Shown here in pieces: positions 1 through 50,919 of a stretch of DNA of 64,000 nucleotides. This stretch comes from Bigelowiella natans CCMP2755. Lineage: Eukaryota; Protista; Cercozoa. The notes below the pieces were generated by a model. The model was not told the origin of the DNA and ran no database searches. It worked only from the letters and a program-made list of their open reading frames with translations. Positions within the stretch are counted from its first letter, which is position 1. Each line of letters opens with the position of its first letter. The DNA lies in assembly GCA_000320545.1 (NCBI GenBank), contig ADNK01000041.1, positions 1 through 64,000 of the forward strand, in the 5' to 3' direction. Both the position numbers and the translations under genes were made by a program.

Positions 1-115
1 GATCGGAGTTCGGACGATGATGGTCAATCGTCATAACTCCTCACATGGCCTGAGGATTGATATGAAGGGCATTTGCGACCGCGTGAGAGCCATTCCTGGG
101 GTATGTACGTAAACT

Positions 116-174
<59 letters not shown>

Positions 175-1070
175 CATTCTTTTTTGTGCGGTTGAGTGTA
201 AAAGAAGCAAGATTCTTTTAAATGATCGTCACCATTCATTCGCATTTCATTGTTGATAATTATTATCTTCTTCTTCCCCCCCCCCTCCCTTCATTCAGGC
301 AAATCTAGGCCGTTACGAACGTAATCTATGGCCTCAGAGGCGGGAACTGATGTAATATAAATCGACGTGCATATGAGCACATATGTATACGCGTGTATTT
401 AAGTATTTTGTGTGTGTTCAAAGAGGCTATCTGACACATCACATGCACGTTATTCAAGTATTAATTTATCTCTTCCACCGTTCTTTCTTGCCTTGTCGGT
501 CGTCCTCTCTCTCTCCCCCCCCCCCCATGTCTCTTTTTATATAGGTATATTAAACGGCGAGTTGGAATGGGTAGGTCATCGAATAATATCGTAGAGGAGG
601 AAGAGGAGGAGGAGGAGCTGGGATGATGAGGACGATGCTCTTTTACCGGCAAAGAGCTAATTCCTCCTTCCCCATTCCACCACCATAACCTCCTCCTCCT
701 CGTCCTCCTCCTCCTACCGCTGCTACTAGTAGTAGTGCGCTGCACTCGCTGCTTTAACAATAGAGGGTCTTTGCTGTCAGCTGTAGCTAGCCATGATTGA
801 TGGGAGAGTTGTATTTGTTCTTGAATGCGAGCTGTTATAGCTATTGCTGCTGTTGTTGTATTGTCGTCGCCATCACCATCATCATATCATCATCATCATC
901 ATCATCATCACCATCGTTAATGATTAGTCATCATCATCTATAACGACGAGCTGCTGTTATTTCCAGGGGTGTGTGTCGATGCTGCGGGTGGGTACGACTC
1001 CGACGACTCCGATGGCGCTCCAGGTGATAGGAATGAAAAGAACTTTCATCTGAAACAGCGATTCTGCACC

Positions 1071-1106
<36 letters not shown>

Positions 1107-1370
1107 GAGAGAGAGACGGGTTGGAGGGGGGCACCCAAAGATGTACGACTATATATTAATATTGAATGATATAATTTCGGATGTGTCCTCTACCGAGAGA
1201 GCGTATTGACCCCAATTTCCACCGATCTTTGTTTTTCTTAGAGGGGGGCAAGCTGATGAGAATGAACATCGTTACAGCGCACGAAACCAGTAGTACACCC
1301 GAATATGATTGCACTTACCGTTTGCCATATTCTGAAAATACCACACACACAAACATATAAATGTATATAT

Positions 1371-1413
<43 letters not shown>

Positions 1414-2247
1414 ATGTGTGTGTGTGTGTGTGTGTGCACTCACGCCCTTTGCGAATATAACCACACTATATATTATGAATAGGGGTCTCCTGTGGAGATG
1501 TCGTCGATCTGAGGATAAGCCAAGGTCGCCACCACTCCTACCGCAATCATGCTGCCGTCGTTGTCTAAGTAGTAGCAAAACTGGTACAAGCACGGGAGGA
1601 TGTGCTACTACTGCAACGATTGCTCTTGATAGATTTCATTTTCTCCTTATAATGAAGGATGATTTCTATTCCCTCTGCTGCACAAATAATGTCACACAGG
1701 GAACCGTCGTTGTATGGTCGTGCTGTGTGATGACGACCAAGTGCGCGTCGAGCCTACACCTTGCGAGGATGGAAATAAGAATCATGGTGAGAGGATCGTC
1801 ATCATCTTCATAATGGCTTCTATGTTCCTTCCCATCTCACTCCCCCCCCCCCCCCCCCCCGGGGGGGGTCTTTTTCTCTCTCATTCTCCCTCTCTACCTA
1901 TAGTCTATACGCACGTGTTGTAATGGAAGTAAATATATACGTCTAACACGTATACATAATATATATATATATATATATATATATCAAATGTTTCATGTTT
2001 GCTGTCTCCCAGGTGATGACGATGATGAGGACGAAGATGAAGATGACAACGAAGGTAGAGTTGCGCAGCTAGGTGATACTGCCTTGTGCTTGTAAGATCG
2101 AGCCGCAACCAACAGTCGTCGTTGGGGCTCTCATCTTATGCAAAGCGAGCTCGGTTTGCGTGCGTATGCGTGATGACATGATGATGATTCTCAGGAGGAG
2201 GAGGAGGAGGAGAACACGGTGATGACGATGACGACGACGATGATGAT

Positions 2248-2322
<75 letters not shown>

Positions 2323-2649
2323 CCCCCCCCCCCCACAACAGCAACAACGCACGACGCGACATGACACGACCTTACACTACACAACACAAACAAGGATACA
2401 CCCATGATGCAAAGCCTGACTCGGACGACGATGACCTAGCATACGCAGCGAGGATGAGGCGCATTGGCGGTGTTGCGGGAGCCCGAGGGCGTGGAGGGGT
2501 GTACGTTAACTCACGTGTTCGCATCACTGTCTCGCCTCTCATCGAATGGCGGCAAATGCTTGGTAGTAGTAGCAGTAGTAGTAGTAGTGGTAGTAGTAGT
2601 AGTAGTAGTAGTAGGGATATGGTATTGTTCCAGTAGTATTGTTGTAGTT

Positions 2650-2683
<34 letters not shown>

Positions 2684-3600
2684 GGGTGACAATGGAGATG
2701 ATAAAATGAAGATGATGGTGGTGGCGATAATGATGAAGATGGTGATGACGGTGGTGCCAACATATGTTCATCTCTTCTTCCTCCTCCTCCTCCTCCTCCT
2801 CCTCCTCCTACAGGAGAGGTGTTCCGAACTGTCAGGCAGCTCTACTGGCTTCGATTCACGCACACAAACACGTGTGATACCGTCGCTCGGAGGAGGAATA
2901 GGAAGGGGGGGGGCGATGGGAAGACGGAGTCATCGTCGTCGTCGTCGTCGTCAGCATCGAGTTTCCCGCTTGCCGCGTTCCAAGAGCGCCTCATTGCCTC
3001 AAACTTCCGCCAGCCTATGCTGCAGATGTAAGTTGTAGACATGATGACGAGGAAGATGATGTGGCAGCCGATTATGTTTAATATGGCCTCCCCCCCCCCA
3101 CCCTCTTTCTTTCTTTCTTTCTTTCTTTCTGTTCTCCGTCTCTCGCAGGTACATGCAGGAGGTGCTTCCTCGCGTGCGGTGCAAGAGAGAGTGGGTCGAC
3201 CTGCTGGAGAACATGATGAATAACCTGCCCAACAGTCACGTGGACGTCATCTCGGTTGATTCGTGTAGCATGATAGAATGATGATGATGATGATACTAAA
3301 AAATGCTAGAAACGGTAATGATGAGCACATCTCGATATTAGGGGGGCATTATCCTACCCAGATTTTAATTTTTCCTTCATTTACCCAGCAGCGCGCTGCA
3401 TGATGTTCCTTTACTAAATTATCTTTTCAAACGAAGCGCTTGATTTAAATCAACACACAACTACAACAACAACAACAAATCTAGGCAGGAATCCCAGATG
3501 GCACGGCAGAGGCACCCCCCCAGCTGGCCACCACTACCGGTTATTTCCAAACGTTTTTATCTAGCCGCTGTAAAAATGCAGTTGAGTATAATTATATATG

Positions 3601-3642
<42 letters not shown>

Positions 3643-3946
3643 GAGAGAGAGAAGGAGGGAAAAAAGGGGGGAAGATTCTTTACTTGCATATTGGGGAGGA
3701 TACGCCTTCTTTCTCGTAACACCGAGTCGTAATAATGCTCTCTCAGCAAAACAAGGCCTTCTGGGCGGAACGTTCAAGTGGGATGATGCAAAGCACGGTG
3801 ATGATGACGACGATGATGATGAAGATGAGGATGATGATGAAGATGACGCCATGTCCAGATTGATCATCGTGACGCATTTTCCTGCAATGTGACGCTTTGA
3901 TTGTCACATGTCGCTGTGTTCAGCGAGCAGCCTTGACGATCCCATA

Positions 3947-4019
<73 letters not shown>

Positions 4020-4121
4020 TTGGGATGTCTCGGCCCCAAAGGATATCGAGTCATGAGCGTGGTTAGAGGAGACGAATGGAGCGATAAGGTAACACAACAG
4101 AAGCTGAAACCCCACACATCC

Positions 4122-4162
<41 letters not shown>

Positions 4163-4452
4163 CAATATCTGGGATATATGCACAATGAAAAGCTTCCCTA
4201 TTTGAAGAAACACGGTGTGATTGATGACGGCAGGTGGGGGGTCCTCTGACAAGACTGGGCCTAGACGTGAGGAAGGTAATTGTGGCGTGTGTTTGTTAAC
4301 CATCGGTGTGCTATTCGTGTTGTTATCATGAACAGCGCATCGGCACACCACTTCCAACCTCTTGATTCAAGCAGCGTACATGCAAAATAATAATGCACAT
4401 ACCTACATATATCAGGGAGATCTCATCGTTTCGCTCAATAGGAAGCTGCTAT

Positions 4453-4497
<45 letters not shown>

Positions 4498-4841
4498 TTC
4501 TTTATTCTTTTTTTTGGCTGGTCTTCGCGCTTGTTTTCCTTGTAAGCGTCCTTGCGCGACAACAACCCTATGATGTATACGGCTTGCATGTTTGCATCCT
4601 CCTCTTCCTCCTATTATTACTTGCATTATGACCTCCTCATCGCTAATTTTCTGCTGCTGCTGCTGCTGCTCACTGATCTCGTAGGGGAGAGGGCAAGAGG
4701 GGTGGATTTTCACGGTAAATGATACATGAATGAATCTGGAAGGGGAGGGGCACGGTTGAATGAGTCAATTCCCATATTTTAAAGGACTCTATTGGAGTTA
4801 GATTTTGTGCTGATGTTTGCTACTCTTCTTTGCGTCTTTGC

Positions 4842-4885
<44 letters not shown>

Positions 4886-5200
4886 CCCTCTCTCACTCAC
4901 TCTACTGAGTCTCTCTCTCTCTCTCTCTCTCTCTTGTTGTGTGTGTATATATATGTGTGTGTGTATATATGTGTGTGTGTGTTTGTGTGTGTGTGTGTGC
5001 TGAAGAAGTGGCTACCATCAACGCCTCTGTGCTATTACCCCCGTTGTTTGCCCTGACCCTATAATAATAACCGGTAGAATGCTTGCTGGGTGTGCTGGGA
5101 GGGAGGTGCTGCTAACGGTAGTGGAGAAGGATCCCAGCTACGAATGCTTGGAGTATCACATCTCCTCTGACCTACCCAAAGGGCAAAGAAGAGGAGGTGA

Positions 5201-5239
<39 letters not shown>

Positions 5240-5266
5240 GTCTTCCTCTAGTATATGTTTGTATGT

Positions 5267-5303
<37 letters not shown>

Positions 5304-6065
5304 TTTATCCGTATGTGTAAAGGCAAGATCACGAGCGACGATGATTCATCTTCTTTCGGGATGATGGAGCTCTCCGGAAATGGTAATGCTGTTGCTGCTG
5401 CTGCTGCTTTGCCATGTATCGATGGGCTACTTCATACTCGAAATGGAGGATCGCTTACAAGCCTTGTATGCGACGTAGTAACCACCGAATCCTATTTACT
5501 ATTTTTTATCCAGACAACGCTCCTTCCAAGTCAAAGCTCTCCAAATCTCAGCGCAAGAGGCAAGACACAACTGCTTCGCTAATATTTGTCTGCTTGCAAG
5601 AAATGCTTTTCGTCACGATGATGACGACGAGTGGAAAGAAGGGCGACGGGGGAGCTTATAGCCTACTGCTGCTGCTGCTGCTGCTGCTGTATATTCTCAA
5701 TCAGGCTCAAGAAGAAAAAGGCGAAGATGGCCGCTAAGGCTGCGGAGGAGGAAGGGAAGAGCTCGGCCGCGATTAGCAAATCTGGTCAGTATATATATAT
5801 GCCCAGCTGCAACACGTGCGGCTGAATCGATCGTAGGAGTAGCAAAGGCCTTTTGTACATGCTGTTTGCTCCTATTCCTTGCGTGTTGGTTTTCCTTTGC
5901 TTTCCATTATTTTCTTCCCGAGTCTGATCAGTCGTTTCTATCTCGTGGCTCCTTCATGCCTATCCTCTTCCTTCCTTCGGTGCTGCAGGCAACGGCGGGG
6001 GTGTCGCCCAACGCAGCGTGATGAGCGAATCGAAGCGATTTATACATCTGCACAAGACCAAAGAA

Positions 6066-6105
<40 letters not shown>

Positions 6106-6517
6106 GTCTCGCCCCCCTCCCACTTTCCCTTTCTCTGCAAGAAAGTCAAACAGCATAGCTACTGTTACGACTCTATTTCTGTACCGCACAATGCCCCTGT
6201 CTAGAGCCGAAGTAGCGCTGTCGTAATCGTGATTATCATCATCATTAGTATCATCATCATCATCGTCATCACCATCATCAGCTGAGCTTACCCCCCCCCT
6301 CCCCCTTAATGTAAAAGGTATGCGGACTGTACGAGTACAGTGCGTGTCCTCCGAGGAGGACATTGATATAAGGTGCTTTTGCTCCTGCCTTTTTGCACTA
6401 GACGCACAAAGAAGAAGATGAAGAAGAAGAAAGAGGAGGAGGAGACGGGCAGCTTGACAAAATCAGCAGAGATAGCATACGTGTTCATTGAGTGTGAATA
6501 AGACGCGTGAGTAACAA

Positions 6518-6549
<32 letters not shown>

Positions 6550-7832
6550 CCAAGCATATCATCTATTTACGCTATACAAAAGAGTCATCTCTGTATAAAT
6601 CCCACCAAAGCAGCGCGTAATTGAGAATGTAACATCTCTCCGTAAGATATCGTGACTGGGTGAGGCTGGCCACGCAGCATGTCCACACCGAGAGTGCAGG
6701 TAATAATTACGAAAGACAATGACGACAACGACGCTGTGGCGGGAGAACGTTTCACACAACATGCTAAAAACATGCTCGCAGTAGTACTAGTAGTGGTAGT
6801 GTTTGTAGTGGTTGTATTTGTAGTAGTAGTAGTAGTGTGAACTAGATGTCGCAGCCTAGTTTTCCTCTTCATCTGTGTGTATGAGCATAATGATGGGAGT
6901 CATAAACGCTCTGGGAGGAGGAGTAGGAGGAGGAGGAGGAGGAGGAGGAGGATGAGAGGGACATATTGCAATACTGCACGCATGCACATTCCCTCTTCTG
7001 TAGGCAAGCTGGGGTATGTTCATGTGTCTGAGATGGAAAAGAAAGGATTTGCGGATTTCATCCGAAGCTACTCCGTCGAAAGCGAACGGTATTTTCCACC
7101 CACCCCCTCCCTTTTCTTTACATGCAGAAGTATACAAGTGAGTACACCGGTGTTATCTTTACTCAGAGACGGCATCATCCTTGATCTGAGAGGCAATGCT
7201 GGAGGGTGAGAAGGCGAAATCTAATAGTAGAACGCGCAGCTGCTATTCCTATACTTGCTGATATATACCTGATAATTTGATAATTGAAGGAAAAGCGTAG
7301 CTGAAATCTCCTTGCTTCCCCTCCATCACCATCCCCTCCCTCCCTCCCTCCCTCCCTCCCTCTCTTATGAGTGCCAGTTGTTGAGAAAACTACAATGTTT
7401 CCCCTCATCAGAAACTGCTCCCCTCTCATGCTCGACGCTCTGTCAAGGAAGGTGTGGCATCTCCCTCTAAGGAAAGAAGGGGAGGGGCGAGAGACGAAAG
7501 GAGTAGTAGGAGTAGTGACAGCGGCGCATCGAATCCGTACTCACGCTATGCTTCCTTTTTGATCAAAGGCGCTCGGGGTTCACATGCCTCGCCATGGCCA
7601 TGCAACGAGCTTCCCCCCGCAGCTGCCTGGGAGACGACAGGTGCGGTGCCGTATTTCGCTATAATCCATGCTGATCCATGGTTCAAACATTATGTTTGTG
7701 TGTTGTGTGTGTATGTGTGTTTTATAGGTTATTGTGGCCCTCATCAACGAGGACACGTGCAGCGATGGCGAGGGTGCGGCATATACCAGCAAGCATTGTT
7801 AATAGATAGCCTGCGGATATACGCGTGTGCGT

Positions 7833-7870
<38 letters not shown>

Positions 7871-8813
7871 ATGTAAATGTTCTCTAAAAATATGTGTAAT
7901 TTATACTGTTTTCCCAGGTCTTGCTCACTCCCTGAAAGAGCTGAAAATCGCTACGTGCGGCCCTACTAATTTTGCATCATGATGCACGAGCTTGGCGCTG
8001 CGCCTCTGGTGTCCACCGCACTGACAATTCATATCCCCGTTCTCCCGCAGGATAATGGGTACTCGAACGTGGGGAGGCGTTATCGTGACAGCGGACGTAA
8101 GGCCTCTAAGCAGCTACATCTACGATATGTCTTGTAGTGTCTTCTCTGTCGTCATCACCGCCTCATCATCTCATCATGGCCACCATTATTATTCACCAGA
8201 GCGTGGAGCTGGTAGATGGCACTTCGATCGGCCTGCCAACAGAGGGGTTCTATCTGAAAGGAGCTGCTCTTGGTAATGATAATAGGCTCAACGCTCATCA
8301 ATTCACTTAATCCACCAATCCATCAATCCACCAATCATCGACCCAACAATGTCCGGAGATCAGAGAAAGTCCGCAACGACGACGAACGCTCCTGCATGAG
8401 ATTCGAGCTGCGTATTCTCTCGTTAGATTGACATTTACTCACAAGTCCGTTCTTGCTGCTGCTCTGCTCCGCTCCATTGTCGCATGTGCTTATCATTTCT
8501 AGGGCTGGAAAACTTTGGTGTCTCCCCGCACATCGTCGTAGAGGACCCACCGTTCTTGGTCACCACCCCAAAAAGGAAAGGAGGGGTGAAACCATCGATG
8601 CGGGAGGGGGCCTCGTTGACGGGATATGGGCCGCCGAGAGGTCCCTCACAGGACCCACAGCTCTCAGCAGCTATTGGGGAGGCCATGTCGCAGCTCGTTG
8701 CCAAGACGAATAAGAAGAACGAGAGGCGGGAGAATGAAAAAGTCGAAATAGACGATTTTGCATCCCTTGAAACAGCAGCAATTGGAAGCTCGAGACAGCA
8801 GCATGAAAAGTAG
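1..8813 (+). CDS. tri: Tricorn protease homolog (peptidase S41, C1-PDZ-C2 region), >25 exons, 5' end outside window
   Basis: Spliced exons give IDMKGICDRVRAIPG (2-100); RVRITVSPLIEWRQMLG/EVFRTVRQLYW (ends 2562, resumes 2814); YMQEVLPRVRCKREWVDLLENMMNNLPNSHVDV (~3149-3253); PDZ-like KQGLLGGTFKWDD/GYRVMSVVRGDEWSDK/VGGPLTRLGLDVRK/GDLIVSLN; YRDWVR; KLGYVHVSEM; DGIILDLRGNAGG; ALINEDTCSDGE; IMGTRTWGGV; GLENFGVSPH...DPQLSAAI; stop at 8811-8813. Motif order matches tricorn. Confidence 0.9.
2563..2760 (+). repeat. Compound intronic microsatellite (GTA)n/(GAT)n, representative of dozens of (TA)n, (TG)n, (TC)n, (CAT)n, (TAG)n, (GAG)n tracts
   Basis: Directly visible; such tracts lie mostly within introns throughout the window. 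Confidence 0.95.
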
Positions 8814-11455: not shown

Positions 11456-12166
11456 ATGGCTTCCGACTCGGCTCCTGAGGCCCTTCTGGAGCAGATGTTC
11501 AAAGAATGCCAAGCCGTGGCCGCCACTCACCAAAAAACGTATGATTGAAGGAAAGAAAGAAATTCTTATCCAATTTCCCCCACTCGTTTTCCCTCGCAAA
11601 TAGGGAGTGGAAAGAGAGAGAAAATTTTTCCGATGTCGTCGGTGAGAAGGGGTAGAAAAGGCAACATTGCCAGTTGGCAAACCTGGCTCTTCTTGACTTT
11701 GAACCGAAAATGGTCATGAACAATAATGATCTACTAGGTACACAAATGGGTTGCTCGTAGTGAACGGCATGATAAATCGACTAGAGAAGGCCTTAGGAAA
11801 AGCAACGAAGAGGCCGTTGACGCTTGATAAATCCGAGAAGCTGTGCGATTCCCTTCTAGATGGCAAGCCCCACATCAAGTACCTATACTAAAAACTACAT
11901 TTTTTTTGGTTTTTCATTGACACAGTCAAAAAACATGGTTCCTCAATTTACCTTAAATCCCTGCTAATATTGTCTGATATGTAACTCCAAGCTCGGTGTG
12001 GTCGATATAATCGTTATTCCTTCTCAGGTTGGCCCGAGAGTTTAAAGAATTGTACGGATCTGTTCAGCAACTTGGTAGAACAATCGATCGAAATTTGAAA
12101 CGTGCATCCGATGCGTTCGAAAACCAAACTGAAGGGGTCAGGGGCCAAGTCAACAGCAGCAGTAGT

Positions 12167-12197
<31 letters not shown>

Positions 12198-13571
12198 CCT
12201 GCAAATTACAAAGTGCGGCTGGCCCGTCTTTCTCCTCGAAAGAACTTGCCCGAGTGATAATTCATTCGTTGATGCGGAGGGGGAAATTTGAAACTGCGGA
12301 TTTGGTGGCGCGAGAGCTGAAGCTTGACGGCTCACGCATTGTTCCAACAGCGACAAGGAAGGCCTTCGAGCACATGCACCACTGCCGCCTCGCGCTTGAG
12401 AAGAAAAATATCGTCCCCGTGCTCGAGTGGACACAACAACAGCAAGAACTTCTAGAAAAGGACGATTCTTCGACGACCACAACGACGATGACGATGTCCA
12501 CAGCATGTACCTCGAGCAGCTCAGAGAAGGAGGGGGGGGGTAACGACTCACGCACTCACCTGATGCGCTCTAGGATAAGAGACCTTAAATTCCAACTTCT
12601 TAGACTTCGTTACCTGCAGTTAGTGCAGGAAGACATACGCAACCCCACGGCATCGTCCTCGTCATCGTCATCGTCATCGTCGCAGCAAGCACAACGCAAT
12701 AATACCCCTGCAGCCTCACACGCCAACGGCAACGGATCCTCCCCCTCCTCGTCCAGTATCGCCAATTCTTCTTCCCCTTTACCTTCATCCACCGCTACTT
12801 CTGCCATGAGCAGTAAGCTGCATGTTTCCAACGGAAGTAGTAATAGTAGTAGTAGTAGTAGTAGTAGCAGCAGTCGTTGTCGTCGTCGTAATAGTAGTAG
12901 CTTCTCCAAGCCTATAGCGTTTGCTCGACGATGGTTTGTTGAGTTTGCTCGTGATCGACAGAGAGATATTGAGAGACTAGCAGGGGCTCTGCTCTTCGCG
13001 AGCGATATCCCAAATTCCCCTTACCGAGACCTGTACTCGGATGAGGCTTGGCAGGTACTCAGAGCTGCTGGCTGCTACCAATCTCATCACCACCACTAAA
13101 TTACCCACCATGCATCTCTCTCTCCACAAACACACACACACACACAAGCTGCACACTATTTTATCATGTCGGTCGTCATTTAAGGGTATTTATGTTAATG
13201 CCCGTCTGAGGTGGTGATCTATTCGCCTCGTCTCTACTTTCTTAATCGGTTGCGTTTTTCCCCCGTTTGATCTTCGACTACTCTCCCTTGTTGTTGTCCT
13301 CCTTTCTTTCCTTCAAAAGAACGTGATGCAGCACTTCGAATCGACCTTCTGCAGAGCTCACGGCTTTGCAGGGAGAGACCCTCTCATGGTAGCAACATTG
13401 GCCAGCGACATCGCTCTTCCAAAGCGCGCCAAATATACTGCAGTCGTTCGGCGTTCCAGCGGCACGTCTCTGCTTGATAGAAAGGATGATGCGCTGCCAG
13501 AAATAAACTTGGGGAAGAAGATGCAGTTTCATTCCACGTTTGTTTGCCCCATATCGAAGGTGTCTTTTTTT

Positions 13572-49697: not shown

Positions 49698-50919
49698 ATG
49701 TGGGCTGGCCAAGCAGCTAAATCCCTTTTCGGACATCTGAGGCGACGTGGCCACGTTCTTCTCCAATCCAGGGCCTTGGTTGCAGCACCTGTCGGAGCGT
49801 TCGCGCTCGGGGCGGCGCTCTGGCAGTCGTGGTCCCCTTCAAACGCGGAGCCACATTATCCGGAAGAAAGGCGCACGGTGCAGCTCTTTAAAGACGCACG
49901 GAATTCAGTAGTATCCATCACAAACCTTTCAAAAGTTCCAAATTCCTTCTTCAGCGACGATGTGAAGGTAGAAGCCATAGGTGTCGGGAGCGGTTTCGTG
50001 TGGGACTCCTCGGGCCACGTGATAACGAATCACCACGTTGTGGAGAATAGTGTAGGAGTGCGAATTATGCTTCCTGATGGGGAGCAATGCCTCGGGAAAG
50101 TCGTGGGGGTTGATGAGGCGACTGATCTGGCGGTGATCCAAATTCCAGAATCCTGCTGCAACAAAGTGAAGCCAATAAAGTTCGATGAAAACCAGACCGT
50201 GGAAGTCGGTCAAAGCACGTATGCCATTGGGTATGTCACCACTAATACCTCCACAACCTTCCTCTCATCTGTGTGTCAAACACGATGGATGCATTTGTAG
50301 GTATCCTTTCGGGCTCGACCAGACCTTGACCGCAGGGTTGGTGAGCGGTGTTGGAAGACAGATGCCAGGCAAGCCACTAATCTTCGATGTCATTCAGACT
50401 GATGCGGCTGTGAACCCCGGGTCTTCCGGAGGGCCTCTTGTAGACTCTAAAGGTCAACTTATTGGGGTCAACGCTGCAATGCTCACAACGAATGGTGGAT
50501 CCTTCAGCGGCGTGGGCTATGCGATTCCTCATCAGCAGGTGAAAAAGGTGGTAGAGAGCCTAATAAAACACGGCCGCGTTATACGCCCAGCTCTCGGTAT
50601 CACGATCGCTCCAGAACGAGTCTTGGCGCACTTTGGAGAGAAAGGAGTCCTCGTTTTCGAAGTAATTCACGGCAAAGCTGCGTGGAGGGCAGGTCTGAAT
50701 CCAACATTCAAGCTCAGGGGGGGTGAAGTGCGGGTTGGGGACGCCATAGTAGCGATTGATGGACGGAAGATTGAGTCTTCGAAGGATCTCTTCATGACTT
50801 TAGACGATTTAAATGTCGGGGATAACATAACTGTTGGACTCAAGTCGTTTGACCACGCGAGCGGCAAGTTCAAGCATAGCAGGAATGTGAAGATTACTCT
50901 GCAAGCGAAGGAACAATAA
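49698..50919 (+). CDS. Deg/HtrA serine protease (trypsin domain + one PDZ), intron 50231-50300
   Basis: GSGFVWD, ITNHHVV (His), TDLAV (Asp), AIG/YPFGLDQTLTAG, IQTDAAVNPGSSGGPL (Ser); PDZ RPALGI...GDAIVAIDG. Confidence 0.93.

What the first reader, a model, noticed from the sequence alone, without database searches (positions are those of the whole stretch)
1..8813. Intron-rich eukaryotic tricorn protease with an intact catalytic tetrad
Seen: more than 25 short exons splice into the C-terminal half of a tricorn-like protease, which the ORF track does not show. Known: Thermoplasma tricorn (S41) is a hexameric peptidase acting downstream of the proteasome, with catalytic S745-H746, S965 and E1023, and the family is known from archaea and bacteria. 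Equivalent motifs are all present: NSHV (~3231-3242), TCSDGE (~7755-7772), GTRTWGG and LENFGV (~8505-8520). Inference: an old horizontal acquisition, fully domesticated with introns, giving this alga a prokaryote-type peptide-degradation system. I know of no characterised eukaryotic tricorn, but could not search.
Basis: partly seen in the sequence, partly recalled or inferred. Interest (0 to 1): 0.88.

Follow-up and report, generated by a model that had tools for sequence, protein, structure and literature searches.

The report
Expressed tricorn-type protease gene in alga
The alga Bigelowiella natans carries and transcribes an intron-rich gene for a complete tricorn-type serine protease, an enzyme that textbooks assign to archaea and bacteria, and a few other marine protists have related genes.

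Summary
Window 1-8813 (+) carries the C-terminal two thirds of one gene of Bigelowiella natans (JGI Bigna1). It has at least 27 short exons. From base 2814 on, 24 exons add up to 1824 nt (607 codons plus stop). This equals the length of spliced RNA contigs from three studies.

The product is a tricorn (S41B) protease homologue. It matches the Thermoplasma structure 1K32 at E 1.5e-30, and 1K32 is also its best fold match. The counterparts of Ser745-His746, Gly918, Ser965 and Glu1023 are all present.

The window starts at a contig end. The beta-propeller half lies on the neighbouring contig C3697, so the gene is full length.

The public gene model (298 aa) is truncated and skips one exon.

The gene is not unique to this alga. 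It groups (SH-aLRT 98) with six sequences from culture transcriptomes and ocean metagenomes, one of them split by a spliceosomal intron. A bacterial origin is likely, but the donor is unresolved and archaeal sequences were not in the tree.

B. natans also has TPPII, the supposed eukaryotic replacement of tricorn.

I found no paper on a eukaryotic tricorn, and no earlier finding of this scan mentions one.

Verdict: a new member of a known kind, of moderate interest.

The parts
1..100 (+). Exon (start possibly beyond the contig end) encoding ...GLRIDMKGICDRVRAIPG. It corresponds to the stretch after the 7-bladed propeller. Donor GTATGT at 101.
   Evidence: Profile hit at positions 567-588; tblastn to 18 bacterial tricorns; sequence read. 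Not covered by the laid reads.
1700..1786 (+). Probable exon (...VLCDDDQVRVEPTPCEDGNKNH). Boundaries are tentative.
   Evidence: tblastn to the eukaryotic relative P0164 residues 683-727; AG at 1698-1699 and GTGAGA at 1787. No RNA was laid here.
2418..2562 (+). Exon ending ...SRVRITVSPLIEWRQML, the start of the C1 domain. The 5' boundary is uncertain. The donor G|GTAGT at 2563 joins to 2814.
   Evidence: Profile positions 679-695; matches to P0164, L137 and L138; the joined sequence reads EWRQMLGEVFRTVRQLYW, against P0004 EWRQMLGEVARLQRDQFW.
2814..3027 (+). Exon: C1 domain with a low-complexity insert.
   Evidence: RNA contig piece 2813-3027 and joint 3027|3149 in three runs.
3149..3254 (+). 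Exon carrying NSH (3231-3239), the counterpart of Ser745-His746.
   Evidence: RNA piece 3149-3254. BLASTP to P0004 aligns SH with its TSH. P0004 TSH aligns with T. acidophilum S745-H746.
3485..4714 (+). Six PDZ-region exons: 3485-3539, 3747-3797, 4042-4088, 4234-4275, 4416-4453, 4685-4714.
   Evidence: Joints 3539|3747, 4088|4234, 4275|4416 and 4714|5078. This is the only six-exon chain found (of 496 open-frame chains of up to eight exons with the required 263 nt) that keeps exons 3747-3797 and 4416-4453, chosen from the depth per bin.
5078..5784 (+). Exons 5078-5196, 5323-5382, 5514-5559 (GC donor) and 5705-5784: the end of the PDZ domain and a lysine-rich low-complexity linker.
   Evidence: RNA pieces 5077-5194 and 5703-5783; joint 5382|5514; 106 nt required between them.
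5989..6699 (+). Exons 5989-6066, 6318-6372 and 6647-6699 (…MRTVRVQCVSSEEDIDIRYRDWVRLATQHVHTESAG). Exon 5989-6066 is absent from the public model.
   Evidence: 186 nt required between the anchored pieces. 5989-6066 is the only single 78-nt exon with an open frame. Supported by homology to the cDNA L133.
7004..7451 (+). Exons 7004-7088 (KLGYVHVSEMEKKGF...), 7167-7205 (DGIILDLRGNAGG, the oxyanion-hole glycines) and 7412-7451.
   Evidence: RNA piece 7002-7087; alignment to 1K32; G114 and G115 invariant in 36 sequences.
7569..7640 (+). Exon ALGVHMPRHGHATSFPPQLPGRRQ, skipped by the public model P0001.
   Evidence: Transcript length requires 280 nt between 7088 and 8200, and the depth per bin fits. 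The relative P0002 has ALGGQFPRYGKPTPFPPNVPGTRQ at the same place.
7728..7773 (+). Exon VIVALINEDTCSDGE. The S at 7761-7763 is the nucleophile, the counterpart of Ser965.
   Evidence: Alignment to 1K32/1N6D; invariant S140 in A1.
7918..8272 (+). Exons 7918-7954, 8051-8096 (GTRTWGG) and 8200-8272.
   Evidence: RNA piece 8200-8273 and joint 8272|8503.
8503..8813 (+). Last exon: LENFGV (the E at 8508-8510 is the counterpart of Glu1023), a lineage-specific tail, and the stop at 8811-8813.
   Evidence: RNA piece 8502-8785; alignment to 1K32; invariant E198.

Best explanation
Window 1-8813 (+) is the 3' two thirds of a single-copy, transcribed nuclear gene of Bigelowiella natans. It encodes a full-length tricorn-family (MEROPS S41B) serine peptidase of roughly 1,600-1,750 residues. 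The domain order is two N-terminal beta-propellers (on the neighbouring contig), then C1, PDZ and the C2 catalytic domain, lengthened by low-complexity inserts. Shown: the exon structure, the splicing, the intact reading frame, the homology and the conservation of the catalytic residues. Inferred: it works like Thermoplasma tricorn. That is, Ser (in TCSDGE) attacks the peptide bond with His (in NSH) as base, Ser and Glu (in LENFGV) support them, the NAGG glycines form the oxyanion hole, and the propellers gate access so that only oligopeptides are cut. It belongs to a small clade of protist genes whose nearest relatives are bacterial. The most likely origin is one old transfer from a bacterium into a eukaryote, followed by intron gain. 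It coexists with TPPII.
For: Organism: P0001 is named eukprot jgi/Bigna1/125832. Homology: P0001 against 1K32/1N6D tricorn E 1.5e-30, with Ser965 and Glu1023 aligned; Pfam Peptidase_S41 80 bits; an AF2 model of pLDDT 80 whose best PDB fold is 1K32, E 2.6e-14, ahead of all CtpA-type S41 enzymes. His746. Invariant S, E, GG and RTWGG in 36 sequences. Colinear exon hits. Splicing and expression: 19 runs of 6 studies hold about 20% of the words, as expected for the exons only; GT..AG joints and in-frame anchors; the model of 1824 nt equals the transcript length and has no internal stop. The transcript contig extends 3408 nt upstream of 2813. N-terminal exons on C3697 (YYRYPVLCGDLLVF, SISPDGKTLVF, DGRYLYFLSSRAF and others) are colinear with bacterial and protist relatives. 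Single copy. Clade of 7, SH-aLRT 98 among 140 rows. The relative on Tara scaffold L138 has a GT..AG intron inside the conserved VGYVH motif and passes Pfam Tricorn_C1, PDZ_Tricorn and PD40.
Against: No activity, assembly or location data exist. Only 7 of the 23 introns in 2814-8813 were printed as joints; the rest rest on length accounting, depth, splice signals, open frame and homology. Exons in 1-2562 and on C3697 rest on homology only, and the start codon is not fixed. Single exons do not reach Pfam thresholds for Tricorn_C1 or PDZ_Tricorn, and the joined protein was not searched. The His746 equivalence rests on a 28-residue pairwise alignment (E 2e-4) plus colinearity. The tree is a quick search on 219 columns, without archaeal sequences and with an unresolved sister group. 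The eukaryotic origin of four of the six clade partners is inferred from their sequence style, not from a named organism.
Confidence: 0.85

Rival explanations
1. The gene is not a bacterial import. It was inherited vertically from the archaeal ancestor of eukaryotes and lost in nearly all lineages.
For: The protist sequences form one group that is not nested inside any particular bacterial phylum, and its sister group is unsupported. Tricorn is ancient and widespread in prokaryotes (PMC1586193).
Against: It needs very many independent losses. No EukProt protein other than the B. natans model appeared in three database searches, although the length and word filters make this weak. The nearest clusters in the ESM Atlas are all bacterial. 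The best BLASTP partners are bacterial at 37-43% identity.
Confidence: 0.1
2. B. natans received the gene from its green-algal endosymbiont or from another alga (eukaryote-to-eukaryote transfer), not directly from a bacterium.
For: The clade includes very GC-rich (62-72%) intron-bearing contigs from ocean and other metagenomes and a second culture transcriptome. These are clearly different organisms from B. natans. Chlorarachniophyte nuclei are known mosaics of green and red algal genes (PMC4074131).
Against: None of the partner sequences could be assigned to a taxon with the tools at hand. Branch lengths inside the clade are long.
Confidence: 0.25
3. The gene is a decaying relic or a non-catalytic tricorn-like protein, a scaffold or propeller protein without peptidase activity.
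For: There are large low-complexity inserts in C1, between the PDZ and C2 domains, and in the tail. The N residue before SH and the C before SDGE differ from the usual T and G. An intron-retaining contig (8244-8531) is present in all three runs.
Against: The frame is open over 607 codons across 24 exons. Every catalytic and oxyanion residue is conserved, and the same positions are invariant in 36 homologues. The gene is expressed in six studies. The inserts lie at the same places in the clade partners, so they are old and tolerated.
Confidence: 0.07
4. The sequence is bacterial contamination of the assembly, or an ordinary CtpA/D1-processing S41 protease.
For: Bacterial-type domain set. Another S41 match exists elsewhere in the genome (C3177).
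Against: 23 spliceosomal-type introns full of microsatellites; spliced transcripts; eukaryotic neighbours (a CTLH-domain ORF and an HtrA-like exon). Tricorn scores E 1e-30, against 5e-7 for the D1 protease. Propeller and C1 exons are present.
Confidence: 0.01

Closest known systems
Tricorn protease of Thermoplasma acidophilum (PDB 1K32, 1N6D-F; MEROPS S41B)
   Same: Same domain order (beta-propellers, C1, PDZ, C2). Counterparts of Ser745-His746, Gly918, Ser965-Asp966 and Glu1023, plus the GTRTWGG motif. Best sequence match and best fold match among solved structures.
   Different: Eukaryotic nuclear gene with dozens of introns. About 1.5 times longer because of low-complexity inserts: about 240 residues from the catalytic His to the RYRDW motif, my own count, against about 110. 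Only about 29-35% identity in C2. Hexamer or capsid formation, and the interaction with factors F1-F3, are unknown.
Bacterial tricorn homologues (for example Streptomyces Tri1, and many genomes annotated 'tricorn protease' or 'S41 family peptidase')
   Same: Nearest relatives by sequence (37-43% identity in C2) and same architecture (Pfam sets).
   Different: Intronless, about 1,070-1,100 aa, without the lysine-, glycine- or acid-rich inserts. The protist sequences form their own group.
[quoted passage not shown]
   Same: Presumed role: a giant ATP-independent peptidase acting on oligopeptides after the proteasome (PMC2651629).
   Different: Unrelated fold (subtilisin-type S8). B. natans has its own TPPII gene on another contig (C3716), so the tricorn gene is an addition, not a replacement.
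CtpA / D1 C-terminal processing protease and Prc (S41A)
   Same: Shares the S41 catalytic fold and a PDZ domain.
   Different: No propellers or C1 domain, a Ser-Lys dyad, and far weaker matches (E 5e-7 against 1.5e-30).

Membership tests
Tricorn protease (MEROPS S41B) | C-terminal Peptidase_S41 (C2) catalytic domain closest to tricorn rather than to CtpA/Prc | tested here: met
   Pfam PF03572 80.2 bits. 1K32 E 1.5e-30 against D1 protease 5e-7. Best fold match is 1K32, E 2.6e-14.
Tricorn protease (MEROPS S41B) | Nucleophile Ser965 (with Asp966) in a G-S-D-G-type motif | tested here: met
   TCSDGE aligns with AGSDGD of 1N6D. S140 is invariant and D141 is at least 90% conserved in 36 sequences.
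Tricorn protease (MEROPS S41B) | Ser745-His746 in the C1 domain | tested here: met
   NSH of exon 3149-3254 aligns with TSH of P0004 (E 2e-4), which aligns with S745-H746 of Thermoplasma. Profile hit at positions 720-755. This is a two-step, short alignment, and the exon alone finds nothing in the PDB.
Tricorn protease (MEROPS S41B) | Glu1023 in a G-V-E-N-x-G-V motif | tested here: met
   GLENFGV aligns with GVENYGV. E198 is invariant.
Tricorn protease (MEROPS S41B) | Oxyanion-hole glycine (Gly918, NGGG) and the GTRTWGG motif | tested here: met
   NAGG and GTRTWGG align with 1K32. G114, G115 and RTWGG are invariant.
Tricorn protease (MEROPS S41B) | Pfam Tricorn_C1 and PDZ_Tricorn domains above gathering score | tested here: inconclusive
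   Single exons are too short and give no hits. The joined protein has no reference and was not searched. The exons do hit the matching profile positions in order. The clade relative L138 passes both families (27.1 and 30.2 bits).
Tricorn protease (MEROPS S41B) | N-terminal 6- and 7-bladed beta-propellers | tested here: met
   Colinear exon matches on G000:C3697 (L135 +) to profile positions 28-512 and to protist relatives. The transcript contig extends 3408 nt upstream. The number of blades was not determined.
Tricorn protease (MEROPS S41B) | Arg131/Arg132 anchor for the substrate C-terminus | not tested
   The N-terminal exon model is too incomplete.
Tricorn protease (MEROPS S41B) | Homohexamer (and capsid) assembly; peptidase activity on oligopeptides; cooperation with the F1-F3 aminopeptidases | not testable with these tools
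   M1 aminopeptidase genes exist in the genome, but they are universal in eukaryotes and say nothing about a partnership.
CtpA/Prc-type C-terminal processing proteases (S41A) | A PDZ domain plus S41 domain without propellers or C1, and closest similarity to CtpA/Prc | tested here: not met
   Propeller and C1 exons are present. CtpA-type matches are 20 or more orders of magnitude weaker.

The most novel reading that the evidence does not exclude
A so far undescribed eukaryote-specific branch of giant tricorn proteases (about 1,600-1,750 aa, with shared lysine- or glycine-rich inserts between the PDZ and C2 domains) exists in several marine protist lineages. It works beside TPPII as a second self-compartmentalising peptidase, possibly in a particular compartment or condition. 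That would overturn the view that tricorn was lost at the origin of eukaryotes and functionally replaced by TPPII.
Probability: 0.3. Interest if true: 0.65.

Novelty: new member of a known kind. Interest (0 to 1): 0.45.

Why it matters
The papers I could search treat tricorn as a prokaryotic post-proteasomal peptidase that the first eukaryote lost, with TPPII as its eukaryotic counterpart (PMC1586193, PMC2651629). Here an alga has both, and the tricorn gene is intact, spliced from dozens of exons, and shared with a handful of other protists. That gives a concrete eukaryotic system in which to ask what tricorn does that TPPII does not. It is also a clean example of a large bacterial-type gene fully converted to eukaryotic gene structure. 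On the practical side, the public B. natans model of this gene is badly truncated (298 of about 1,700 residues, and one further exon skipped).

Tried and rejected
- Pfam family scans of the whole genome for Peptidase_S41, Tricorn_C1 and PDZ_Tricorn, and a bacterial tricorn protein as query, did not find the locus because the exons are too short.
- The last exon and the NSH exon, each alone against the PDB, gave only chance hits.
- PF26549 and PF26550 are not in the Pfam copy used for genome scans.
- I first took contig C3695 for the upstream neighbour. Its weak colinear hits turned out to be low-complexity noise. The true neighbour is the end of C3697.
- The look-up of encoding contigs has no record for P0001.
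- The metagenome scan with P0001 gave one distant locus only.
- A search with a bacterial full-length query was flooded by 7,224 bacterial hits. A search with the Tara protist protein gave one close relative and no EukProt entry. Both were limited to the 8,000 candidates sharing most words, so they say little about other eukaryotes.
- The ESM Atlas shows only bacterial clusters.
- The careful tree did not finish in two runs of 300 s, so only the quick tree is reported.
- A paper search with 'tricorn' as a word start mostly matched Phaeodactylum tricornutum.
- Joined step left out: I sent no joined spliced protein to any search tool. Exons were concatenated only inside scripts, to test frame and length.


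Full report
**What is there**

The window is G000:C3696:1-64000 of a 91-Mb assembly. The existing protein model that matches the last exon at 100% is named eukprot jgi/Bigna1/125832 (aug1.1_g540). The organism is therefore Bigelowiella natans, as earlier notes of this scan also say. Window base 1 is contig base 1.

I fetched 60 full-length bacterial tricorn genes with the pattern for GTRTWGG. I compared them with the first 10 kb by tblastn, and compared a profile of 47 of them with every stop-to-stop frame of the first 9.3 kb. About 18 short + strand frames match in strictly increasing order of profile position, from 567 at base 32 to 1079 at base 8729. Chance cannot give that order.

**Transcripts**

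Nineteen public runs from six studies hold about a fifth of the sampled words of 1-8813. That is what exons alone would give.

I laid one raw-read run and three contig runs on 2790-8785; the contig runs come from three studies. They contain the same spliced transcript contig (4,922, 2,010 and 4,562 nt). Seven joints are printed, all GT..AG: 3027|3149, 3539|3747, 4088|4234, 4275|4416, 4714|5078, 5382|5514 and 8272|8503.

The anchored pieces 2813-3027, 3149-3254, 5077-5194, 5703-5783, 7002-7087 and 8200-8273 all fall in one reading frame of the contig.

For the stretches between anchors I enumerated exon chains with AG and GT/GC boundaries, an open frame and exactly the required length. I chose among them by depth per 200-nt bin and by homology.

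The result is 24 exons from 2814 to 8813. They give 1824 nt, or 607 codons plus stop, with no internal stop. This is exactly the length the contig demands. The median exon is 53 nt, the median intron 145 nt, and one intron is GC-AG.

Only 7 of the 23 introns are directly printed joints. The others are constrained inference.

**The public model is defective**

P0001 (298 aa) starts inside the gene. It lacks exon 5989-6066 and exon 7569-7640 (ALGVHMPRHGHATSFPPQLPGRRQ). A related cDNA has ALGGQFPRYGKPTPFPPNVPGTRQ at the same place as the second.

**What it encodes**

- P0001 matches Thermoplasma tricorn (1K32, 1N6D) at E 1.5e-30. The next family, the D1-processing protease, scores 5e-7.
- In that alignment the S of TCSDGE is Ser965, the E of LENFGV is Glu1023, NAGG is the NGGG oxyanion loop, and GTRTWGG is conserved.
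- The NSH of exon 3149-3254 aligns with the TSH of the metagenomic tricorn fragment P0004. That TSH aligns with Ser745-His746 of Thermoplasma.
- In an alignment of 36 homologues these Ser, Glu, Gly-Gly and RTWGG positions are invariant.
- An AlphaFold model built on that alignment has pLDDT 80. Its best solved match is 1K32 (E 2.6e-14), ahead of all CtpA-type enzymes.
- Pfam gives Peptidase_S41 at 80 bits for P0001.
- The C1 and PDZ exons are individually too short for Pfam. I did not send a joined protein to any search tool, because it has no reference. That test is left open.

**The rest of the gene**

The transcript contig runs 3408 nt upstream of base 2813, far more than the window holds.

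The preceding contig by number, C3695, gave only low-complexity noise.

The end of C3697 (L135, + strand) carries colinear exons for profile positions 28-512: YYRYPVLCGDLLVF, NSHPSISPDGKTLVF, GGRVVYNCGPDLFLLD, GTLWEMAPFGGPAVE, SFADSCPSWDPDGRY and DGRYLYFLSSRAF. They also match two protist relatives in order.

So the gene is full length, spans a sequence gap, and is probably about 1,600-1,750 codons long. The start codon is not settled. The first homologous exon has no in-frame ATG, and a possible upstream exon (MASASEARIRELEEELRRLK...) would give a charged N-terminus rather than a signal-peptide-like one. This is unverified.

The gene is single copy.

**Relatives**

Among proteins of 164-521 residues, the best hit besides the model itself is P0002, at 49% identity. 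It lies on a 1,162-nt intronless contig of JGI sample 3300017038 that continues the homology upstream, so it is a cDNA.

P0010 lies on a similar cDNA-like contig of sample 3300017341. That contig has a C1 domain (…AELGVSH…), a PDZ domain and a lysine-rich linker.

P0041 is the last exon of a gene on Tara Oceans scaffolds. On L138 a 1,368-residue open frame ends at GQVG|GTGAGT. After 138 nt, at ...CCTCCAG, the sequence resumes with YVHM. Removing a canonical intron therefore restores the conserved VGYVH motif. That protein passes Pfam Tricorn_C1, PDZ_Tricorn and PD40.

In a tree of the C2 domain with 140 rows, P0001, P0002, P0003, P0010, P0034, P0036 and P0041 form one group (SH-aLRT 98). Its sister group is unresolved.

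The B. natans gene and four relatives read by eye (P0003 and the sequences on L133, L138 and L142) have a long charged, low-complexity insert between the PDZ and C2 domains. Bacteria lack it.

I could not name the organisms. My belief that the two JGI samples are culture transcriptomes rests on memory of their numbering, not on a tool result. No archaeal sequence could be put in the tree.

**Origin**

The nearest non-clade sequences are bacterial, at 37-43% identity. All Atlas neighbours are bacterial. I saw no other EukProt entry, but the searches were blind to most full-length proteins.

One old bacterial transfer into a eukaryote, followed by intron gain and perhaps spread between algae, is the simplest reading. 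I put it at about 0.6. Transfer through an algal endosymbiont and vertical descent with massive loss both remain open.

**Function**

The catalytic machinery and the architecture argue for an active oligopeptidase of the tricorn type; I put this at about 0.8. Hexamer formation (about 0.4) and a post-proteasomal role (about 0.3) are guesses by analogy.

B. natans also has a TPPII gene (C3716:86489-87284, E 1.7e-21) and several M1 aminopeptidase genes. The tricorn gene therefore adds to the usual eukaryotic set rather than replacing it.

**Known or new**

Papers in the library call tricorn prokaryotic, lost by the ancestral eukaryote, and call TPPII its eukaryotic counterpart (PMC1586193; PMC2651629). 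Seven searches found no paper on a eukaryotic tricorn; one of them mostly matched 'tricornutum'. The one fungal mention is a 42-kDa propeller-only protein (PMC12502532).

Domain databases may already list such eukaryotic entries, but I could not check that.

I rate it a new member of a known kind, of moderate interest.

Noticed in passing
G000:C3697:20266-30265 (L135) and window 1: Contig numbering runs against the gene's direction: the end of C3697, not C3695, precedes the start of C3696. The tricorn gene spans the gap between them.
   Followed up: yes
window 5560-5704: A GC-AG intron (donor GCAAGA) among 22 GT-AG introns of the same gene. It is required by the transcript length and by the 45-46 nt side of joint 5382|5514.
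   Followed up: partly
window 8244-8531: A 288-nt contig that reads straight through the last intron is present in all three RNA contig runs, beside the spliced form. This is intron retention or pre-mRNA, and it is why the long transcript contigs break at 8273.
   Followed up: no
window 1-8800, introns: The introns are packed with (TC)n, (CA)n, (TA)n and triplet microsatellites. These produce many spurious non-GT-AG 'joints' and very high depth in some bins of the contig runs (for example 3296|4650 and 4671|5390).
   Followed up: partly
window 50185-50916 (+): A 244-residue open frame with Trypsin_2 and PDZ domains, an exon of an HtrA/DegP-like serine protease. It explains the weak PDZ_Tricorn hit in the genome scan.
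   Followed up: partly
window 12029-13096 (+): A 356-residue open frame with a CTLH/CRA domain, a typical eukaryotic gene about 3 kb downstream of the tricorn gene.
   Followed up: no
G000:C3716:86489-87284 (L143, L144): B. natans has a TPPII homologue (Pfam TPPII 82 and 47 bits in two exons), so it has both giant peptidases.
   Followed up: partly
G000:C3177:40418-40645 (L001): A second, unrelated Peptidase_S41 match (30.7 bits) in a 257-residue open frame, probably a CtpA-type protease.
   Followed up: no
L137:897-1016: In a 70% GC metagenomic relative, the spacer that splits the tricorn-like gene consists largely of CCCTAA-like (telomere-type) repeats.
   Followed up: no
window 8390-8785, run X20: The few raw RNA reads (6% of the run was read) lie almost only at the 3' end, with first mates on the + strand, the same strand as the gene. 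That is the opposite of what most stranded libraries give. The library type is unknown.
   Followed up: no
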